Shown here: piece after piece, positions 58,426 through 63,911 of the stretch | Layout: the number at the start of each line of letters is the position of its first letter | Position numbering within the stretch: the first letter of the stretch is position 1 | DNA from: Thecamonas trahens ATCC 50062 | Lineage: Eukaryota; Protista; Apusomonadida | Reading direction: 5' to 3' | NCBI RefSeq assembly: GCF_000142905.1 | Contig: NW_013657672.1 | Coordinates: 62,001-126,000, forward strand | DNA length: 64,000 bases | The notes under the pieces: generated by a model | Seen by the model: only the letters and a program-made list of their open reading frames with translations | Told to the model about the DNA's origin: nothing | The model's database searches: none | Position numbers and translations under genes: made by a program

Positions 58426-60746
58426 ATGGGTCGCAGAAGACGGAAGAAGGCAGCGGGCAAGGGCAGCAGGGGCTACGCCACCACCTCGCTGGCTTCGGCG
58501 GACAAGACGGACAAGACAGACTCGGCGGTGCCGAAGGCTGTGCAGATCGCATCTGACGTGACGGCTGGGAATGCTGAGCCGCCAGCGGCTGATGACGGCG
58601 CGACAGAGCTCGACGAGAAGCGATGTCGGCATCTGGCGACGGTGCGGACAAAGGTGATGCGCCGTAAGCTGCCGCATGCAGCTCTGGACTCGTGCCTCTC
58701 GTGTGGCACCCAAGGTGCCGAGCTGTGGATCTGTCTGTGGTGTGCTCAGTTGGGTTGTGGCCGCGCTGCGTCGGGCTGTGCGCTGCAGCACGCCCAGTCA
58801 GCGGGAGCAAGCACGTGCTTGTTCTGTCATGCTCGTCGCTGATGGTCTGGTGCTACGGGTGTGATGCAGAGGTTGGGCTGCTTCCCGACCGCGCTCTGCA
58901 CGAGGCCCGCGCGCTTGTCCGCCGATACGCAGGGCTCGGTGACCACGTCATGGATCCGTCGGCGACTAACAGCGATGTGCAACTGCCTGCAGTCAATGCT
59001 GCCCCACCAGCGCTCAAAGGCAAGCGCAACAGCGGTCACGCCCGTTCAGCGCCTGGCAAGATCTCGTGGTGGGACGGTGGCGTCGAGTGCGGCGCCACCA
59101 AGGCCAAGCCCAAGGCCAAGCCGCGGCGGAACACCGCCGGCAAGCGCGGCCGACTCAAGGGCGTTGCGCCCGGCATGTGCGGCATCCCCAACATTGGCAA
59201 CACATGCTTCTTCAACTCGGTCCTGCAGACGCTCGCCCAAATGCCGCCGCTTGTCGCCGGGTTGGTGATCACTCCGCGGCCTGCTGGCATTGCTGGCCTG
59301 CTCAGCGACGTGCTGCGGACCATGTGGAAGCCCTCTAGTGGCAGCCCAAACCCACGCAAGCTCTTTGGCGCCATCTGTGGTCTTGCGCCGCAGTTCAGAG
59401 GTTTTGGTCAGCAGGATGCCCACGAGCTGTTACGGGTCCTGGTTGATGGCTTGCGCGACGAGTCTGACGTGCGTCCGCCACTAGTGGACACTGTCTGGCG
59501 CGGGGAAATGGTCTCGGTAGTCATCTGCGATGTCTGCGCTGTCCCTTCGCTCCGGCGCGAGCCGCTGTACGACATCTCGCTGCCGGTGGGCAAGCCGAGG
59601 GCCGCAGCCACCCGCCCCCACTCTGGCTACGTTGCCGGGGCGGGCTACGGCGCCGCGTCCAGCTCGCGCCGTGGTAAGCGCAAGAACAAGCGTAAGAACA
59701 AGCGTCGCGGACAAGGGCTGGCTGTCGACGACTGGTACAACCCGCTTGAGTCGGCCATCCCCGATCGCGCTGCAGCCACAGAGCAGGCTGCTGTGCCCGG
59801 CCACGATGCGCTCTCGGGCGAGCTCTCCGGCTTTCGCGACGGGACGGGTCCTGACATCGACCACTACGTCGGCCCAGGTGTTGCCGGCTCTGTCAGCTTT
59901 CATCGCCTCCCGCCTGAGCTGGCGGCGGCGGCAAGCGCGACGCCAATCACCCTCGAGGGCTGCCTGGCTGCTTTCGCCGCAGTCGAGACGCTCGATGCCG
60001 CCAATCGCTACGCCTGCTCCGCATGCACCAAGGCCAAGCTGGGTAGTATCGAGGCCGAGCGCGGCGAGCCGCTCCCGCAGCAGGTCTGGCGCAAACGCCG
60101 GGTCTTCCAGACCGCTCTCAAGCAGCTGGTCCTCACACGCCTTCCGCCTGTCCTCATTCTGCATCTGAAGCGGTTCGATCAGTCGCGCGGCCGCATGGCC
60201 AAGCTTGGCGCACACGTGGTCTTCCCTCCCATTCTTGACATGGCTCCGTTTGTGGCAAGCGATCTGCCCCACGTCGACGCAGTCGAGCTCGCGCACTCGT
60301 CATCCTCTGACAGCTCGGCGTCGAACGATGACGATGACGCCACCGCACATGACGACGCGCCGCTGACCTACGCCCTCGTCGGGATTGTCGTCCACAGCGG
60401 CTCACTCCACGGCGGCCACTACGTGGCTTACGTCCGCCACTCGGACGCCATCGCGACCGCGCAGCGAAGGTCCGACTCGAATGCTGCCGATCCAAGTGTC
60501 GACAGCGAGCCGAGAACCCGCAGCCAGTGGCTGGCTTGGTTGCACGCCTCGGCCTGGCTGTATGTCTCGGATTCATCGGTCTCACTCTCGAGCCTCGACG
60601 ACGTGCTGCGGCAGCAGGCGTATCTCCTAGTTTACGAGCGGATTGAGTGTGCGCCCGAGCCTGTACCCGGACCCAATGCTCAGCCGAGCGATGCATCGGA
60701 GACTTCCGACGTACCGGACGCCTCATCGCCGGCGCCTGTGACGTGA
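58426..60746 (+). CDS. Ubiquitin-specific protease USP16/USP45-like (ZnF-UBP + USP) with a 1-nt frameshift at G3 58803-58805
   Basis: ZnF-UBP CRHL..CLSC..LWICLWC...GCGR..ALQH / KHVLVL..VWCYGCD. Cys box GIPNIGNTCFFNSVLQ, QQDAHELL, LHLKRF, His box HSGSLHGGHYVAYV, SDS, AYLLVYER. Confidence 0.9.
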
Positions 60747-63700
60747 GTTGGAGCTCGAGGCGATTGTCGGAGCGAGGTCGTTGTCATCATCGTCGTCGTC
60801 ATCCTGCCCGTCCTCCCCGCCGGTCAATTCGCTCTCCACGAGACCGAGTTCACGGGAGAGGACCGAGATAATGTCGGCAAAGGTCGGACGCGCGGTTGGA
60901 ACCTCGGCCCAGCACGCCTGCAGCATGTTGGCCCAGAGCCGCGGCATGGACTCGCCGATCGGCGGGCGAAGGCCGGCGGCGAGAACGCCGGCAGCAACCT
61001 GTGGCGCGGTGAGGTCGGCAAAGACGGGCGTGCGGGTGACAAGCTCCCACATGGCGATGCCAAAGGCCCAAACATCGGCTGGAGGCCCGTGGTTGCCGCG
61101 AAGCGACTCGGGAGCCATGGCCTTGAGCGGACCCACAAACGTCGAACTGGTAGCCTCTCCCACGCTTGAAGCCTCGGCAAGAACCGTCTTGGAGAGCCCA
61201 AAGTCGGCGACCTTGATGGAGCCGCGCCCGGTCACCAACAGGTTGCGGAGCGCGAGGTCGCGATGAACGAGCCCCTCGGAATGAATGTGCATCATACCTG
61301 ATGCCACCTCAAGCGCAATCTGAAACATGCGGTTGGCCGGAATGGTGACCTGGCCGTCGAAGACAAGCTTGTCGAGTGAGCCGCCCGAGCAGTACTCGGT
61401 GACCAGGTACAGTTCGCGGATGCCAGTCGGAAGGACAACTCCTGACATGCCCAGAAAGAGCACAATGTTTGGGTGGGCTTTGAGCCCGTGCATCGTCGCC
61501 ACCTCGCGGAGAAAGGCGGCCATGTGGCGGCCGTCGACGGCAGCACGCAGGCGCTTGACCGCTACGTCGGCGCCGCGCCAGCTCCCCACATACACAACCC
61601 CAAACGCACCAGAGCCAATCTGGTCGCCGATGACAAGCTCGCCAAAGTCGAGTTGGGCCGCTCCTGCACTTGCGCCAAAGTCAACATCCTTCAGCTCGCC
61701 GTCGCTGCTGCTGCTTCTGGCGCTCGACGGACCGACGCCCGCGAGCTCGCGGCGGATTCGCGCCGCCACCCCGAGCGGGATGCTCGCGCCGCGCGCAAGT
61801 TCGGATGTCGAGAGCGCCTCCACTGCAGCGCCGTCGAGTTTCGCAGCGCGAATAGCGTCAACGTGGATGGCAAGCTCGGGCTGGCCGACGCACCACGCCA
61901 CCACTTGATCAACTGTCCACTTGGCAAGCGGCGCATCGGGCGTCGCCCCCATAGTCACTGATGTGGCGCCTGGCGGCAGTCCAAGCATGGCGGCAGCCTG
62001 CGGGCACGGCACGACAGGGTCAAAGTACGCTCCATCGTGCCTGAGGTCGGACCAGGGAATCGGGAGCTCAAAGCCTGCAGTACGGAACTGGGCCTCAGCG
62101 AAGAGCGCAAAGGCGCGCTCAAAGGCCGGGAATCGCGTACCGTCCCCGTGCGTCGTCCAGAACGTGCGCGGGTCGCCAGGCCACGCCGGTGGCGGAGTCG
62201 GCGACGCCACATCGTCGTGCCGCCACGCCGAGACAGGCACCACAAACGCCGCGAGATCATCGGCCCGCACGCCGGCCAGCGGGGTTGAGAACAGCACTAG
62301 GTCGCCATCGTTGGCAGAGAGTGTGACCCAGGCGTAGCCGCCGACTGGCATCAGTTCCGGCGTCGGCGGGATCTGGACTGCGTCCGATGAGCGCGCCAGC
62401 GCGTCAGCATGCTCGAGCAGCTGTCCAAAGTCGAGTTGGGCCTTATCACCGACCTTGTGATCGGGCGCCAGACGTGCAACGCCACACTCGGCTGCCAGCA
62501 CGTCGACGGGCGTTCCGGTCCACGCGTGTGCGTAGGCGATGACATAGGCTGTGAGCAGGGCCAAGTCGAACGGGTACTTGGTCGACTTGTCCATCCAGAA
62601 CAGTGGATTCGAGCGAAGCGCTCCGGGCGGCCAGCGCGCACCCTCAACGCCGAGGTATGGGTGGAAAAGCCGCCGCCAGAGCTTGGTCAGCCACGGGGCA
62701 TGGATCCAGGGCAGGATCCGGAACGTGATGGGACGGACGACGTAGTAGGCGGCGACCCGGTCTGCAAGTGTGTGGCGGGGATCAAACGGCGGCACGTCCA
62801 TGTGTGGTGCCACCTTGGCTGACGACTGAAGCTTGAGGAGAAAGCACTCGTTGGCCAGGCGCAGCTCGCCCGGCTCGGCCACACCATATGCATCGCAGAT
62901 CGGGTCCAGCACCTCGGGCACCCACATGAGCGGCGTCGTCAGGCCGTGGACGTAGACTATGCCGGACGAGCGCTCTCCAATTGTCAGCGGCTGTCGCACT
63001 TTGCGCACACCATCGTAAAACAAAACAGAGTCGTCGTCTGAGAAGAAAGCAGCCCGCTGGCCTGGATCGTGGAGACCGCCGAGCGTCGCCAGTGCTGCCC
63101 GCGACACCACACTCCCAGGCGTGGCAAAGTCGAAGATTGACAGCGCGTTCGAGCCCGAGCGTGAGGCGAGAAAGTCGAGATAGAGCTGAAAGTGAGCCTC
63201 GACCGTTGCCTTGGCCGCACGCGGCAGCACGTCCGAGACCACCACGTGGCCTTGGGTCCGGAATGCGGCGCGCTGCGCGTCGCTCAGCGCCCGCGCCGGC
63301 GGCAGCGTCGGAACCGCAAGCGGCACCCGTGCCGCTGCACTTGCCATCGGCGGCACCGGCGTGCCACCAAGGACGAGGCGGATCCACATCAGGGTCTCGC
63401 CCATGACGTTGGCCGAGCTTGGCGAGCCACCGGACCAGAACGACTCTGAGCGGAACGGCGACTTTGCAAGCGGCCGCGGTGCCGACGATAGCAGAGCCGC
63501 AGCGAGCGGTGGATGCTGCACATACAACGCAAGAAGGCCATCGCGCATGACATTGACCCGTCGCAGCTTCCATGCCGCCTGCTGCGCCTCGCTCAGCGGG
63601 CGCTCGCGGCGGAGCTGGCGGGCGGCAGCAGCGAGCGTCCCAGCCTCGGCAGCATCACGGAGCAGGATCTGGACCGCCGGCACCGTGTCGTACTTGGTAG

Positions 63701-63911
63701 CTTGAAAGTAGTGCAATGCCGAAGAGTACCTCGCACCGCCGAGTGTAATGGCGATTCGGCATCGCGCCACATCAGGAAACACCGCCGCCACCGCCGCCGC
63801 CGCCTTCTCTGGCACCTGTGGCCAAGCCGAGGAGAGAAAGGCCCAGCCATTGACCTTGCTGGTCGCGAAGAACAGCGTGTCGAGAACGAGTCCCTCATCC
63901 TCCTCAGCCAT
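60723..63911 (-). CDS. NADAR(YbiA)-like - PhyH-like dioxygenase-fold - SAM - tyrosine-kinase/TKL multidomain protein, 1062 aa
   Basis: NADAR pattern (FLS..HYFQATKY..W...VM..QHP.L..LL..FW..N.MG..LM.IR); LSDAQRAAFRTQGHVVV and PHMD; SAM WTVDQVVAW; kinase GSGAFG, VAVK, HRDLALRN, DFG, MAPE, DVWAFG. Confidence 0.88.
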   Translation of the reverse strand: MAEEDEGLVLDTLFFATSKVNGWAFLSSAWPQVPEKAAAAVAAVFPDVARCRIAITLGGARYSSALHYFQATKYDTVPAVQILLRDAAEAGTLAAAARQLRRERPLSEAQQAAWKLRRVNVMRDGLLALYVQHPPLAAALLSSAPRPLAKSPFRSESFWSGGSPSSANVMGETLMWIRLVLGGTPVPPMASAAARVPLAVPTLPPARALSDAQRAAFRTQGHVVVSDVLPRAAKATVEAHFQLYLDFLASRSGSNALSIFDFATPGSVVSRAALATLGGLHDPGQRAAFFSDDDSVLFYDGVRKVRQPLTIGERSSGIVYVHGLTTPLMWVPEVLDPICDAYGVAEPGELRLANECFLLKLQSSAKVAPHMDVPPFDPRHTLADRVAAYYVVRPITFRILPWIHAPWLTKLWRRLFHPYLGVEGARWPPGALRSNPLFWMDKSTKYPFDLALLTAYVIAYAHAWTGTPVDVLAAECGVARLAPDHKVGDKAQLDFGQLLEHADALARSSDAVQIPPTPELMPVGGYAWVTLSANDGDLVLFSTPLAGVRADDLAAFVVPVSAWRHDDVASPTPPPAWPGDPRTFWTTHGDGTRFPAFERAFALFAEAQFRTAGFELPIPWSDLRHDGAYFDPVVPCPQAAAMLGLPPGATSVTMGATPDAPLAKWTVDQVVAWCVGQPELAIHVDAIRAAKLDGAAVEALSTSELARGASIPLGVAARIRRELAGVGPSSARSSSSDGELKDVDFGASAGAAQLDFGELVIGDQIGSGAFGVVYVGSWRGADVAVKRLRAAVDGRHMAAFLREVATMHGLKAHPNIVLFLGMSGVVLPTGIRELYLVTEYCSGGSLDKLVFDGQVTIPANRMFQIALEVASGMMHIHSEGLVHRDLALRNLLVTGRGSIKVADFGLSKTVLAEASSVGEATSSTFVGPLKAMAPESLRGNHGPPADVWAFGIAMWELVTRTPVFADLTAPQVAAGVLAAGLRPPIGESMPRLWANMLQACWAEVPTARPTFADIISVLSRELGLVESELTGGEDGQDDDDDDDNDLAPTIASSSNSRHRRRR

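What the first reader, a model, noticed from the sequence alone, without database searches (positions are those of the whole stretch)
60723..63911. NADAR - dioxygenase-fold - SAM - tyrosine-kinase-like fusion: candidate undescribed nucleotide-damage/ADP-ribose sensing kinase
Seen in one ORF: a NADAR/YbiA-like domain (~63375-63880), a PhyH-like region (~62280-63290), a SAM domain (~61740-61925) and an intact kinase (~60860-61650), with no transmembrane segment evident. Known: NADARs are N-glycosidases acting on riboflavin intermediates or ADP-ribosylated guanine and occur in conflict systems; PhyH folds bind 2-oxoglutarate/Fe; SAM domains oligomerise kinases. Inference: two enzyme-derived sensor domains coupled to SAM-mediated kinase activation, i.e. 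a cytosolic receptor for ADP-ribosylated or damaged nucleotides or metabolites, possibly in innate defence. I know of no described protein with this architecture; it is the best candidate for a new system here.
Basis: partly seen in the sequence, partly recalled or inferred. Interest (0 to 1): 0.85.

Follow-up and report, generated by a model that had tools for sequence, protein, structure and literature searches.

The report
NADAR–SAM–kinase fusion protein of Thecamonas
This is a real single gene of the protist Thecamonas trahens that joins a catalytically crippled NADAR domain, a 470-residue region of unknown fold, a SAM domain and an intact tyrosine-kinase-like kinase; the combination has no known counterpart, but it looks like one more domain-shuffled protist kinase and not a demonstrated ADP-ribose sensor.

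Summary
The 1062-codon ORF at 60723-63911 (-) is real. Its first 1019 residues are identical to the NCBI protein 'TKL protein kinase' of Thecamonas trahens ATCC 50062.

- **Confirmed:**
  - NADAR domain: Pfam 42.7 bits against a cut-off of 35.1; E. coli YbiA E 1.8e-7.
  - Intact kinase: Pfam E 9e-56, all catalytic motifs present, TK-type HRDLALRN loop.
- **Confirmed indirectly:** the SAM domain fails the Pfam SAM models. It aligns (E 1e-5) with the Pfam-verified SAM of the closest paralogue, which has the same SAM-kinase cassette.
- **Not confirmed:** the 'PhyH-like' region.
  - It is an orphan in 1.84 billion representative proteins, with no Pfam or PDB hit.
  - Only its first ~40 residues resemble the PhyH N-terminal motif. 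The rest scores no better than shuffled sequence.
  - Language-model neighbours are PhyH clusters at 0.92. The distal His is absent.
- **NADAR active site:** both distal-ribose glutamates are lost (L66, K150). The phosphate-binding Lys, Arg and Trp remain, so it is a pseudoenzyme.
- **Architecture:** no other protein with NADAR plus kinase was found. Thecamonas TKL paralogues carry many different accessory modules, so domain shuffling is routine here.
- **Function:** the sensor role is untested inference.
- **Verdict:** a new variant of a known kind, of moderate interest. This scan also noted the same stretch in an overlapping window, with no follow-up.

The parts
60723..63911 (-). Whole ORF, 1062 codons plus stop. 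It equals the T. trahens 'TKL protein kinase' for residues 1-1019.
63375..63911 (-). NADAR/YbiA-like domain, residues 1-179 (Pfam match 54-179). Catalytic Glu positions are L66 and K150. K73, R102, W114, R118, E156, W159 and N168 are kept.
61947..63344 (-). Orphan middle region, residues 190-655. No detectable homologue; possibly a decayed PhyH-type domain.
63177..63290 (-). Residues 208-245. This is the only stretch with measurable similarity to the PhyH family, at its N-terminal strand-helix motif (…AFRTQGHVVVSDVL…).
62796..62804 (-). H370-M-D372, a candidate remnant of the HxD metal motif. It is placed on the family's HxD only in a zero-confidence extended alignment.
61737..61931 (-). Divergent SAM domain, residues 661-725.
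60858..61631 (-). Protein kinase domain, residues 761-1018, TK/TKL type. Motifs: GSGAFG, VAVK(786), E803, HRDLALRN, DFG, PLKAMAPE, CW…RPTF.
60726..60854 (-). C-terminal tail, residues 1020-1062: an acidic run followed by RHRRRR. The public model removes it with its 3' intron. It overlaps the end of the convergent USP ORF by 24 nt.

Best explanation
A real, single, cytosolic multidomain protein kinase of Thecamonas trahens from the expanded TK/TKL family, assembled by lineage-specific domain shuffling.

Shown:
- The C-terminal half is a SAM-kinase cassette shared with a paralogue. Its kinase is catalytically complete and has tyrosine-kinase-type catalytic and P+1 loops.
- The N-terminus is a NADAR domain that has lost both glutamates that hold and attack the distal ribose, so it is a pseudoenzyme.
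- The 470 residues in between are coding but have no detectable relative.

Inferred:
- The kinase is the output.
- SAM-mediated self-association brings kinase domains together for trans-autophosphorylation.
- The non-catalytic N-terminal 655 residues act as a regulatory, targeting or autoinhibitory module.
- The ligand, if there is one, is unknown. An ADP-ribose-like phosphate ligand is possible, because the phosphate-contacting Lys/Arg/Trp of NADAR are retained.
For: - Single uninterrupted ORF with uniform codon-position GC, annotated publicly as one gene.
- NADAR is over the Pfam cut-off and hits YbiA.
- NADAR residue map:
  - Pn E43 / YbiA E48 -> L66; E125 -> K150.
  - K50 -> K73, R79 -> R102, W89 -> W114, R93 -> R118 and W133 -> W159 are kept (residue roles from PMC11543638).
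  - The three other Thecamonas NADARs keep the first Glu.
- The closest paralogue (G000:C6, L029 2590-4977) has Pfam SAM_1 plus kinase and aligns from residue 660 onward.
- The kinase motifs are complete.
- The residue after the Gly of subdomain VIII is Pro, not Ser/Thr. The Dictyostelium kinome paper links this feature to tyrosine or dual specificity (PMC1420674).
- Paralogues carry many different accessory modules.
Against: - No transcript evidence for the full-length mRNA. The only RNA-library matches are two short metatranscriptome contigs inside the kinase part.
- No orthologue was found, so purifying selection on the N-terminal 655 residues cannot be tested.
- SAM self-association, kinase activity and any ligand binding are untested.
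- The SAM assignment is transitive, not a direct family-model hit.
Confidence: 0.6

Rival explanations
1. The protein is a cytosolic receptor in which a NADAR-derived and a dioxygenase-derived sensor domain bind ADP-ribosylated or damaged nucleotides (and 2-oxoglutarate). They switch on the kinase through SAM oligomerisation, possibly in innate defence.
For: - The NADAR has lost its catalytic glutamates but keeps its phosphate-binding residues. That is the pattern expected of a reader.
- The architecture is unique.
- Language-model neighbours of the middle region are PhyH clusters at 0.92, in 21/30 and 29/30 hits.
- NADARs act in ADP-ribose conflict systems (PMC11543638, PMC9503650).
Against: - The middle region is not demonstrably a dioxygenase fold. 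If it is one, it lacks the distal His and the 2OG-binding Arg, so 2OG/Fe binding is unlikely.
- There is no conservation outside this one genome and no defence-like gene context.
- Paralogues show that accessory domains are swapped freely in this family.
- There are no binding data.
Confidence: 0.13
2. Neutral or decaying fusion. The NADAR and the middle region are degenerating passengers captured upstream of a SAM-kinase gene and have no ligand or regulatory role. The protein behaves like any other SAM-TKL kinase.
For: - It is a singleton with no orthologue.
- Both enzyme-like parts have lost key residues.
- The NADAR scores only 7.6 bits above the Pfam cut-off, against 84-178 bits for its three paralogues.
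Against: - A 655-codon frame stays open with normal codon-position GC.
- The phosphate-binding NADAR residues are selectively retained while the catalytic ones are lost.
Confidence: 0.2
3. Gene-model artefact. Two adjacent genes (NADAR plus unknown, and SAM-kinase) are read as one ORF, or the locus is a pseudogene.
For: - No full-length transcript evidence was obtainable.
- Methionines at 641 and 654 lie just before the SAM.
Against: - There is no stop codon in 1062 codons, in a genome where the two parts would have to be in the same frame by chance.
- Coding statistics are uniform.
- The public annotation calls one gene.
- Kinase motifs are intact.
Confidence: 0.05

Closest known systems
Thecamonas trahens paralogue on G000:C6 (L029 2590-4977, 795 aa): unknown N-terminus - SAM - TK-like kinase
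   Same: - SAM immediately upstream of the kinase; 40% identity over SAM plus kinase.
- TK-type catalytic loop and P+1 loop (HRDLAARN / PLKWMAPE).
   Different: - Its N-terminal ~400 residues share nothing with the NADAR or the middle region.
- Its SAM passes Pfam; ours does not.
Tyrosine-phosphorylating TKL kinases of Amoebozoa (Dictyostelium Pyk2/Pyk3, SplA, ZakA) and the PTK-like kinases reported for Acanthamoeba and Thecamonas
   Same: - Kinase of the TK/TKL border with lineage-specific accessory domains.
- No Ser/Thr at the PKA-T201 position (PMC1420674; PMC4053784).
- The best outside hits are amoebozoan TKLs and plant CTR1.
   Different: - None of them has a NADAR domain.
- The substrate specificity of this kinase is untested.
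E. coli YbiA and Phytophthora nicotianae NADAR (PDB 2b3w, 8bau): N-glycosidases acting on riboflavin intermediates or ADP-ribosyl-guanine
   Same: Same domain family by Pfam and phmmer. Lys, Arg and Trp that contact the ADP-ribose phosphates are kept.
   Different: - Both glutamates at the distal ribose are replaced (L66, K150).
- The domain is fused to a kinase; YbiA and the P. nicotianae NADAR domain that was crystallised stand alone.
PhyH / PHYHD1-type 2OG-Fe(II) dioxygenases, especially the protist subfamily represented by Thecamonas L012/L014/L015 and P0003-P0036
   Same: - N-terminal motif 'F..xG(Y/H)VVV..VL' in register.
- In an unsupported extended alignment HxD, a 'PGxH'-like 'LPWIH' and a 'GDLVLF' strand fall in order.
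   Different: - No family-model hit, and no similarity beyond the first ~40 residues.
- Distal His, Asn and Arg are absent.
- There is a ~75-110-residue insertion.
SAM-containing kinases such as ZAK/MAP3K20, Eph receptors and Ste11 (from my own knowledge, not tested here)
   Same: A SAM domain next to a kinase, where SAM self-association is used for activation or clustering.
   Different: Different kinase subfamilies, different domain order and no enzyme-derived N-terminal module.

Membership tests
NADAR (Pfam PF08719 / YbiA-like) | Score above the curated family cut-off | tested here: met
   42.7 bits against a cut-off of 35.1 for residues 54-179. The genome scan gives 42.7 bits, 'over cut-off'.
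NADAR (Pfam PF08719 / YbiA-like) | Direct sequence similarity to a solved member | tested here: met
   E. coli YbiA 2b3w at E 1.8e-7, residues 55-179.
NADAR (Pfam PF08719 / YbiA-like) | Conserved Glu at the distal ribose (Pn E43 / YbiA E48 / EcC7 E88) | tested here: not met
   Leu66 at that column. The three Thecamonas paralogues have Glu. Role of the residue from PMC11543638.
NADAR (Pfam PF08719 / YbiA-like) | Subfamily-defining acidic residue in the last strand (E125; Asp in BC4488 type) | tested here: not met
   Lys150 at that column.
NADAR (Pfam PF08719 / YbiA-like) | Phosphate-binding Lys (K50/K55/K95) | tested here: met
   Lys73, invariant in all four Thecamonas NADARs.
PhyH (Pfam PF05721), 2OG-Fe(II) dioxygenase | Match to the family model | tested here: not met
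   No hit at E<=10. The genome scan with PF05721 at E<=10 lists nine other loci, not this one.
PhyH (Pfam PF05721), 2OG-Fe(II) dioxygenase | Sequence similarity over the domain to family members | tested here: not met
   - Only residues ~208-245 score: hhalign P 8e-4 with probability 24%; HMMER 6.6 bits with 0 of 2000 shuffles reaching it.
PhyH (Pfam PF05721), 2OG-Fe(II) dioxygenase | HxD…H iron triad and 2OG-binding Arg | tested here: not met
   H370-x-D372 may be the HxD. The distal His column is Gly546, and the Asn/Arg columns are not matched, in a zero-confidence alignment.
PhyH (Pfam PF05721), 2OG-Fe(II) dioxygenase | Double-stranded beta-helix fold | tested here: inconclusive
   - The single-sequence model has pLDDT 34.5.
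- Language-model neighbours are PhyH at 0.92, with only 145-149 shared features.
SAM domain (PF00536 / PF07647) | Match to a family model | tested here: not met
   Only SAM_Ste50p at E 0.087, 13.5 bits against a cut-off of 21. Not among the SAM_1/SAM_2 places in the genome at E<=10.
SAM domain (PF00536 / PF07647) | Homology to a verified SAM domain in the same position | tested here: met
   BLASTP E 1e-5, 34% identity, to the SAM_1-positive segment (32.5 bits) of the closest paralogue.
Eukaryotic protein kinase, TK/TKL type (PF07714) | Family-model match and complete catalytic residues | tested here: met
   E 9e-56. Gly loop, K786, E803, HRD, N890, DFG, APE and R1008 are present.
Tyrosine kinase group proper | HRDLAARN catalytic loop, P(I/V)KW(T/M)APE P+1 loop, and clustering with TK group kinases | tested here: inconclusive
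   - Loops are HRDLALRN and PLKAMAPE.
- PDB best hits mix TKs (Src-Abl ancestor, ABL, Fes) and TKLs (CTR1, BRAF, MLK).
- Database best hits are TKLs.
- No tree with reference TKs was built.

The most novel reading that the evidence does not exclude
The NADAR domain is a dedicated reader. Having lost hydrolysis but kept the phosphate pocket, it binds ADP-ribose or an ADP-ribosylated nucleobase or NAD-derived signal. This releases a SAM-clustered tyrosine-type kinase. It would be the first kinase gated by a NADAR pseudoenzyme and a eukaryotic route from nucleic-acid ADP-ribosylation to phosphorylation signalling.
Probability: 0.12. Interest if true: 0.75.

Novelty: new variant of a known kind. 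Interest (0 to 1): 0.35.

Why it matters
The physiological roles of eukaryotic NADAR domains outside toxin-antitoxin systems are an open question (stated in PMC11125620). A NADAR that has lost catalysis and is wired to a kinase would be a natural experiment pointing to a reader role. It would parallel macro-domain readers.

As it stands, this is a single unconserved gene in one protist whose kinase family swaps accessory domains freely. Its main value is as a cheap biochemical test case: express residues 1-190 and test nucleotide binding. It also records an orphan 470-residue region that current sequence and structure tools cannot place.

Tried and rejected
**Middle region**
- Exhaustive phmmer against 1.84e9 representatives found only itself and P0002. 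P0002 is an ASH/Ig-repeat protein whose E-value is inflated by eight copies of one weak match. I rejected it as spurious.
- The word-indexed search with residues 1-740 found only itself.
- The own-genome search found no paralogue.
- AlphaFold2 on the single sequence gave pLDDT 34.5 and is unusable.
- Profile tests against Thecamonas PhyH paralogues and a 32-member protist PhyH subfamily gave signal only in the N-terminal motif.

**SAM**
- The SAM_1/SAM_2 genome scans do not reach this locus.

**Reads**
- The runs that hold the stretch are of unrecorded type. They give short contigs colinear with the genome that run past the stop codon, so they are probably the genomic source.
- Two metatranscriptome contigs (231 and 194 nt, identical to the window) cover only 61001-61343.
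- Neither shows a full-length mRNA.

**Other**
- The look-up of encoding contigs has no record for the public protein.
- Nine alternative ORFs on both strands have no Pfam hit.
All searches used the unspliced ORF or its parts by reference.
Full report
**What is there**

The window is G000:C8:62001-126000 of a 28.7-Mb, 65% G+C, intron-poor eukaryotic assembly.

The ORF at 60723..63911 on the minus strand has 1062 codons and an ATG start. Its first 1019 residues are identical to a public protein named 'TKL protein kinase [Thecamonas trahens ATCC 50062]' (P0001, 1021 aa).

The public model leaves the ORF after residue 1019 through an annotated 3' intron and ends two residues later. All four regions under discussion lie in the first exon.

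Several checks support a single cytosolic coding frame:
- GC at codon positions 1/2/3 is about 0.70/0.51/0.75 in every part of the ORF, the same as in the convergent USP gene next door. The middle region is therefore coding in this frame.
- There is no transmembrane-grade hydrophobic segment.
- Nine alternative ORFs on both strands have no family match.
- The 3' ends of this ORF and of the ubiquitin-protease ORF 58692..60746 (+) overlap by 24 nt.

**NADAR domain: confirmed, but catalytically degenerate**

Pfam NADAR matches residues 54-179 at 42.7 bits against a cut-off of 35.1. phmmer finds E. coli YbiA (2b3w) at E 1.8e-7.

The genome has three other NADAR loci, scoring 84-178 bits. I aligned all four. 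I mapped residues through YbiA and through the Phytophthora nicotianae NADAR structure 8bau, whose chain numbering is offset by +2 from the paper.

Residue roles come from the paper that solved the NADAR-ADP-ribose complex (PMC11543638). E43 and E125 hold the distal ribose. K50, R79, W89, R93, W133 and, through water, D130 hold the pyrophosphate.

| Reference residue | Role | This protein |
|---|---|---|
| E43 (YbiA E48) | distal ribose | Leu66 (lost) |
| E125 | distal ribose | Lys150 (lost) |
| K50 | pyrophosphate | Lys73 (kept) |
| R79 | pyrophosphate | Arg102 (kept) |
| W89 | pyrophosphate | Trp114 (kept) |
| R93 | pyrophosphate | Arg118 (kept) |
| D130 | pyrophosphate, via water | Glu156 (conservative) |
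| W133 | pyrophosphate | Trp159 (kept) |

- The R79, W89 and R93 equivalents are placed by spacing within the paralogue alignment and are less certain than the others.
- The three paralogues keep the first Glu, and two keep E125.

The domain is best read as a pseudoenzyme: glycosidase chemistry is unlikely, while phosphate binding remains possible.

**Kinase: confirmed and intact**

- PK_Tyr_Ser-Thr matches residues 761-1018 at E 9e-56.
- The Gly loop GSGAFG, VAVK (K786), E803, HRDLALRN, DFG, PLKAMAPE and the CW…RPTF end are all present.
- The catalytic loop and P+1 loop are of the tyrosine-kinase type.
- Among the ten next-best Thecamonas paralogues after the C6 SAM-kinase, only one more (L022) has HRDLAARN. 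The rest with a recognisable HRD loop have other, Ser/Thr-type loops, mostly HRDLKSxN.
- The residue after the subdomain-VIII Gly is Pro, not Ser/Thr. The Dictyostelium kinome paper associates this with tyrosine or dual specificity (PMC1420674).
- Best solved relatives mix TKs and TKLs. Best database relatives are amoebozoan TKLs and plant CTR1, at 30-43% identity.
- PTK-like kinases have been noted in T. trahens before (PMC4053784).

I leave the group as TK/TKL border. Specificity is untested.

**SAM: accepted through a paralogue**

No SAM family model reaches residues 650-740.

The best paralogue in the genome (G000:C6, 211 bits, 40% identity) aligns from residue 660, well before the kinase. 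That paralogue (L029 2590-4977, 795 aa) has Pfam SAM_1 at 32.5 bits directly before its kinase. The two segments align at E 1e-5.

There is a paralogue with the same SAM-kinase cassette and an unrelated N-terminus.

**Middle region: orphan, PhyH not demonstrated**

Sequence and family searches found nothing for residues 190-655:
- No Pfam hit at E<=10 and no PDB sequence hit.
- No paralogue in the genome.
- In 1.84 billion representative proteins, only itself plus a spurious repeat-inflated match.
- The PhyH model finds nine other Thecamonas loci but not this one.

Two language-model searches put PhyH clusters nearest, at 0.92 in 21/30 and 29/30 hits. They share only 145-149 features, which the tool says is typical of chance or very distant relatives.

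Profile tests used a 32-member protist PhyH subfamily built from Thecamonas L012/L014/L015 and their homologues:
- They give one significant patch, the N-terminal 'AFRTQGHVVVSDVL' motif. hhalign gives P 8e-4 and probability 24%. HMMER gives 6.6 bits, reached by 0 of 2000 shuffles.
- With the first 60 residues removed, the region scores exactly like shuffled sequence.
- An extended alignment with no posterior support puts H370-x-D372 on the family HxD and 'LPWIH' on 'VPGFH'. It puts Gly546 where the distal His should be, and shows a long insertion.

Structure prediction did not settle it:
- The single-sequence model is useless, at pLDDT 34.5.

I put the chance that this is a decayed PhyH-derived domain at roughly one half. 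If it is one, it lacks the iron triad and the 2OG arginine and would not be an enzyme.

**Uniqueness and context**

- No other protein with NADAR or PhyH annotation appears among the 58 best kinase relatives of comparable length. No homologue of residues 1-740 was found. These searches are word-limited and length-limited, so absence is not proof.
- Within Thecamonas, the nearest TKL paralogues carry ankyrin repeats, laminin-G, EF-hand plus C1, LIM or LRR modules. The family is a typical protist expansion in which accessory domains are exchanged freely.
- A second NADAR fusion exists, without a kinase (L006 5071-7629, 852 aa).
- The papers on NADAR that I read mention no kinase fusion.

**Expression**

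- The runs that hold most of the stretch are of unrecorded type. They give contigs colinear with the genome that run past the stop codon, so they are probably the genomic source.
- Two metatranscriptome contigs (231 and 194 nt, no differences from the window) lie in 61001-61343, inside the kinase.
- A single full-length mRNA is therefore not shown.

**Verdict**

The interpretation as an ADP-ribose or damaged-nucleotide sensing kinase is compatible with the NADAR residue pattern but rests on no functional or comparative evidence.

The most likely reading is a lineage-specific, domain-shuffled SAM-TK/TKL kinase with a non-catalytic N-terminal module. It is a new variant of a known kind, of moderate interest.

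This scan noted the same stretch in an overlapping window as well. Nothing there had been followed up.

Noticed in passing
L006:5071-7629 (+) = G000:C28:27070-29628: A second NADAR fusion in the same genome: 852 aa, NADAR at residues 39-178 (79.5 bits, catalytic Glu kept), followed by ~670 residues with no family match except a weak DUF6909 hit.
   Followed up: partly
L029:2590-4977 (+) = G000:C6:609089-611476: The closest paralogue: ~400 unassigned N-terminal residues, then Pfam SAM_1, then a kinase with canonical tyrosine-kinase motifs HRDLAARN and PLKWMAPE. It is a candidate bona fide PTK-like SAM kinase of an apusomonad.
   Followed up: partly
window 60723-60746: The convergent ORFs of this kinase (-) and of a ubiquitin-specific protease (58692..60746, +) overlap by 24 nt at their 3' ends. 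The public model avoids part of this with a 3' intron starting after residue 1019 (~60855).
   Followed up: partly
window 61001-61343: Contigs from two environmental metatranscriptomes (subsurface, aquatic) are identical to the kinase part over 231 and 194 nt. This could mean Thecamonas RNA in those samples or carry-over; I could not tell which.
   Followed up: no
L012:1009-2232 (+), L014:760-2031 (+), L015:175-2001 (+); homologues P0003-P0036: A distinct protist PhyH subfamily with invariant 'RPxWRT…HWDQNP…CVPGFH…WDSRLPHQNFPNT' and a C-terminal TPR-like helical tail. It occurs in diatoms, dinoflagellates and many unnamed metagenome proteins, and carries no specific name in the sources.
   Followed up: partly
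L015:175-2001 (+): The open frame of this PhyH-family gene contains a long run of X, which is masked or undetermined bases in the assembly.
   Followed up: no
window 62385-62582 (residues 444-509): The part of the middle region that has no counterpart in PhyH proteins is predicted as a compact helical unit. Its pLDDT is mostly 60-80, although the alignment is gapped there. It may be an inserted subdomain of its own.
   Followed up: no
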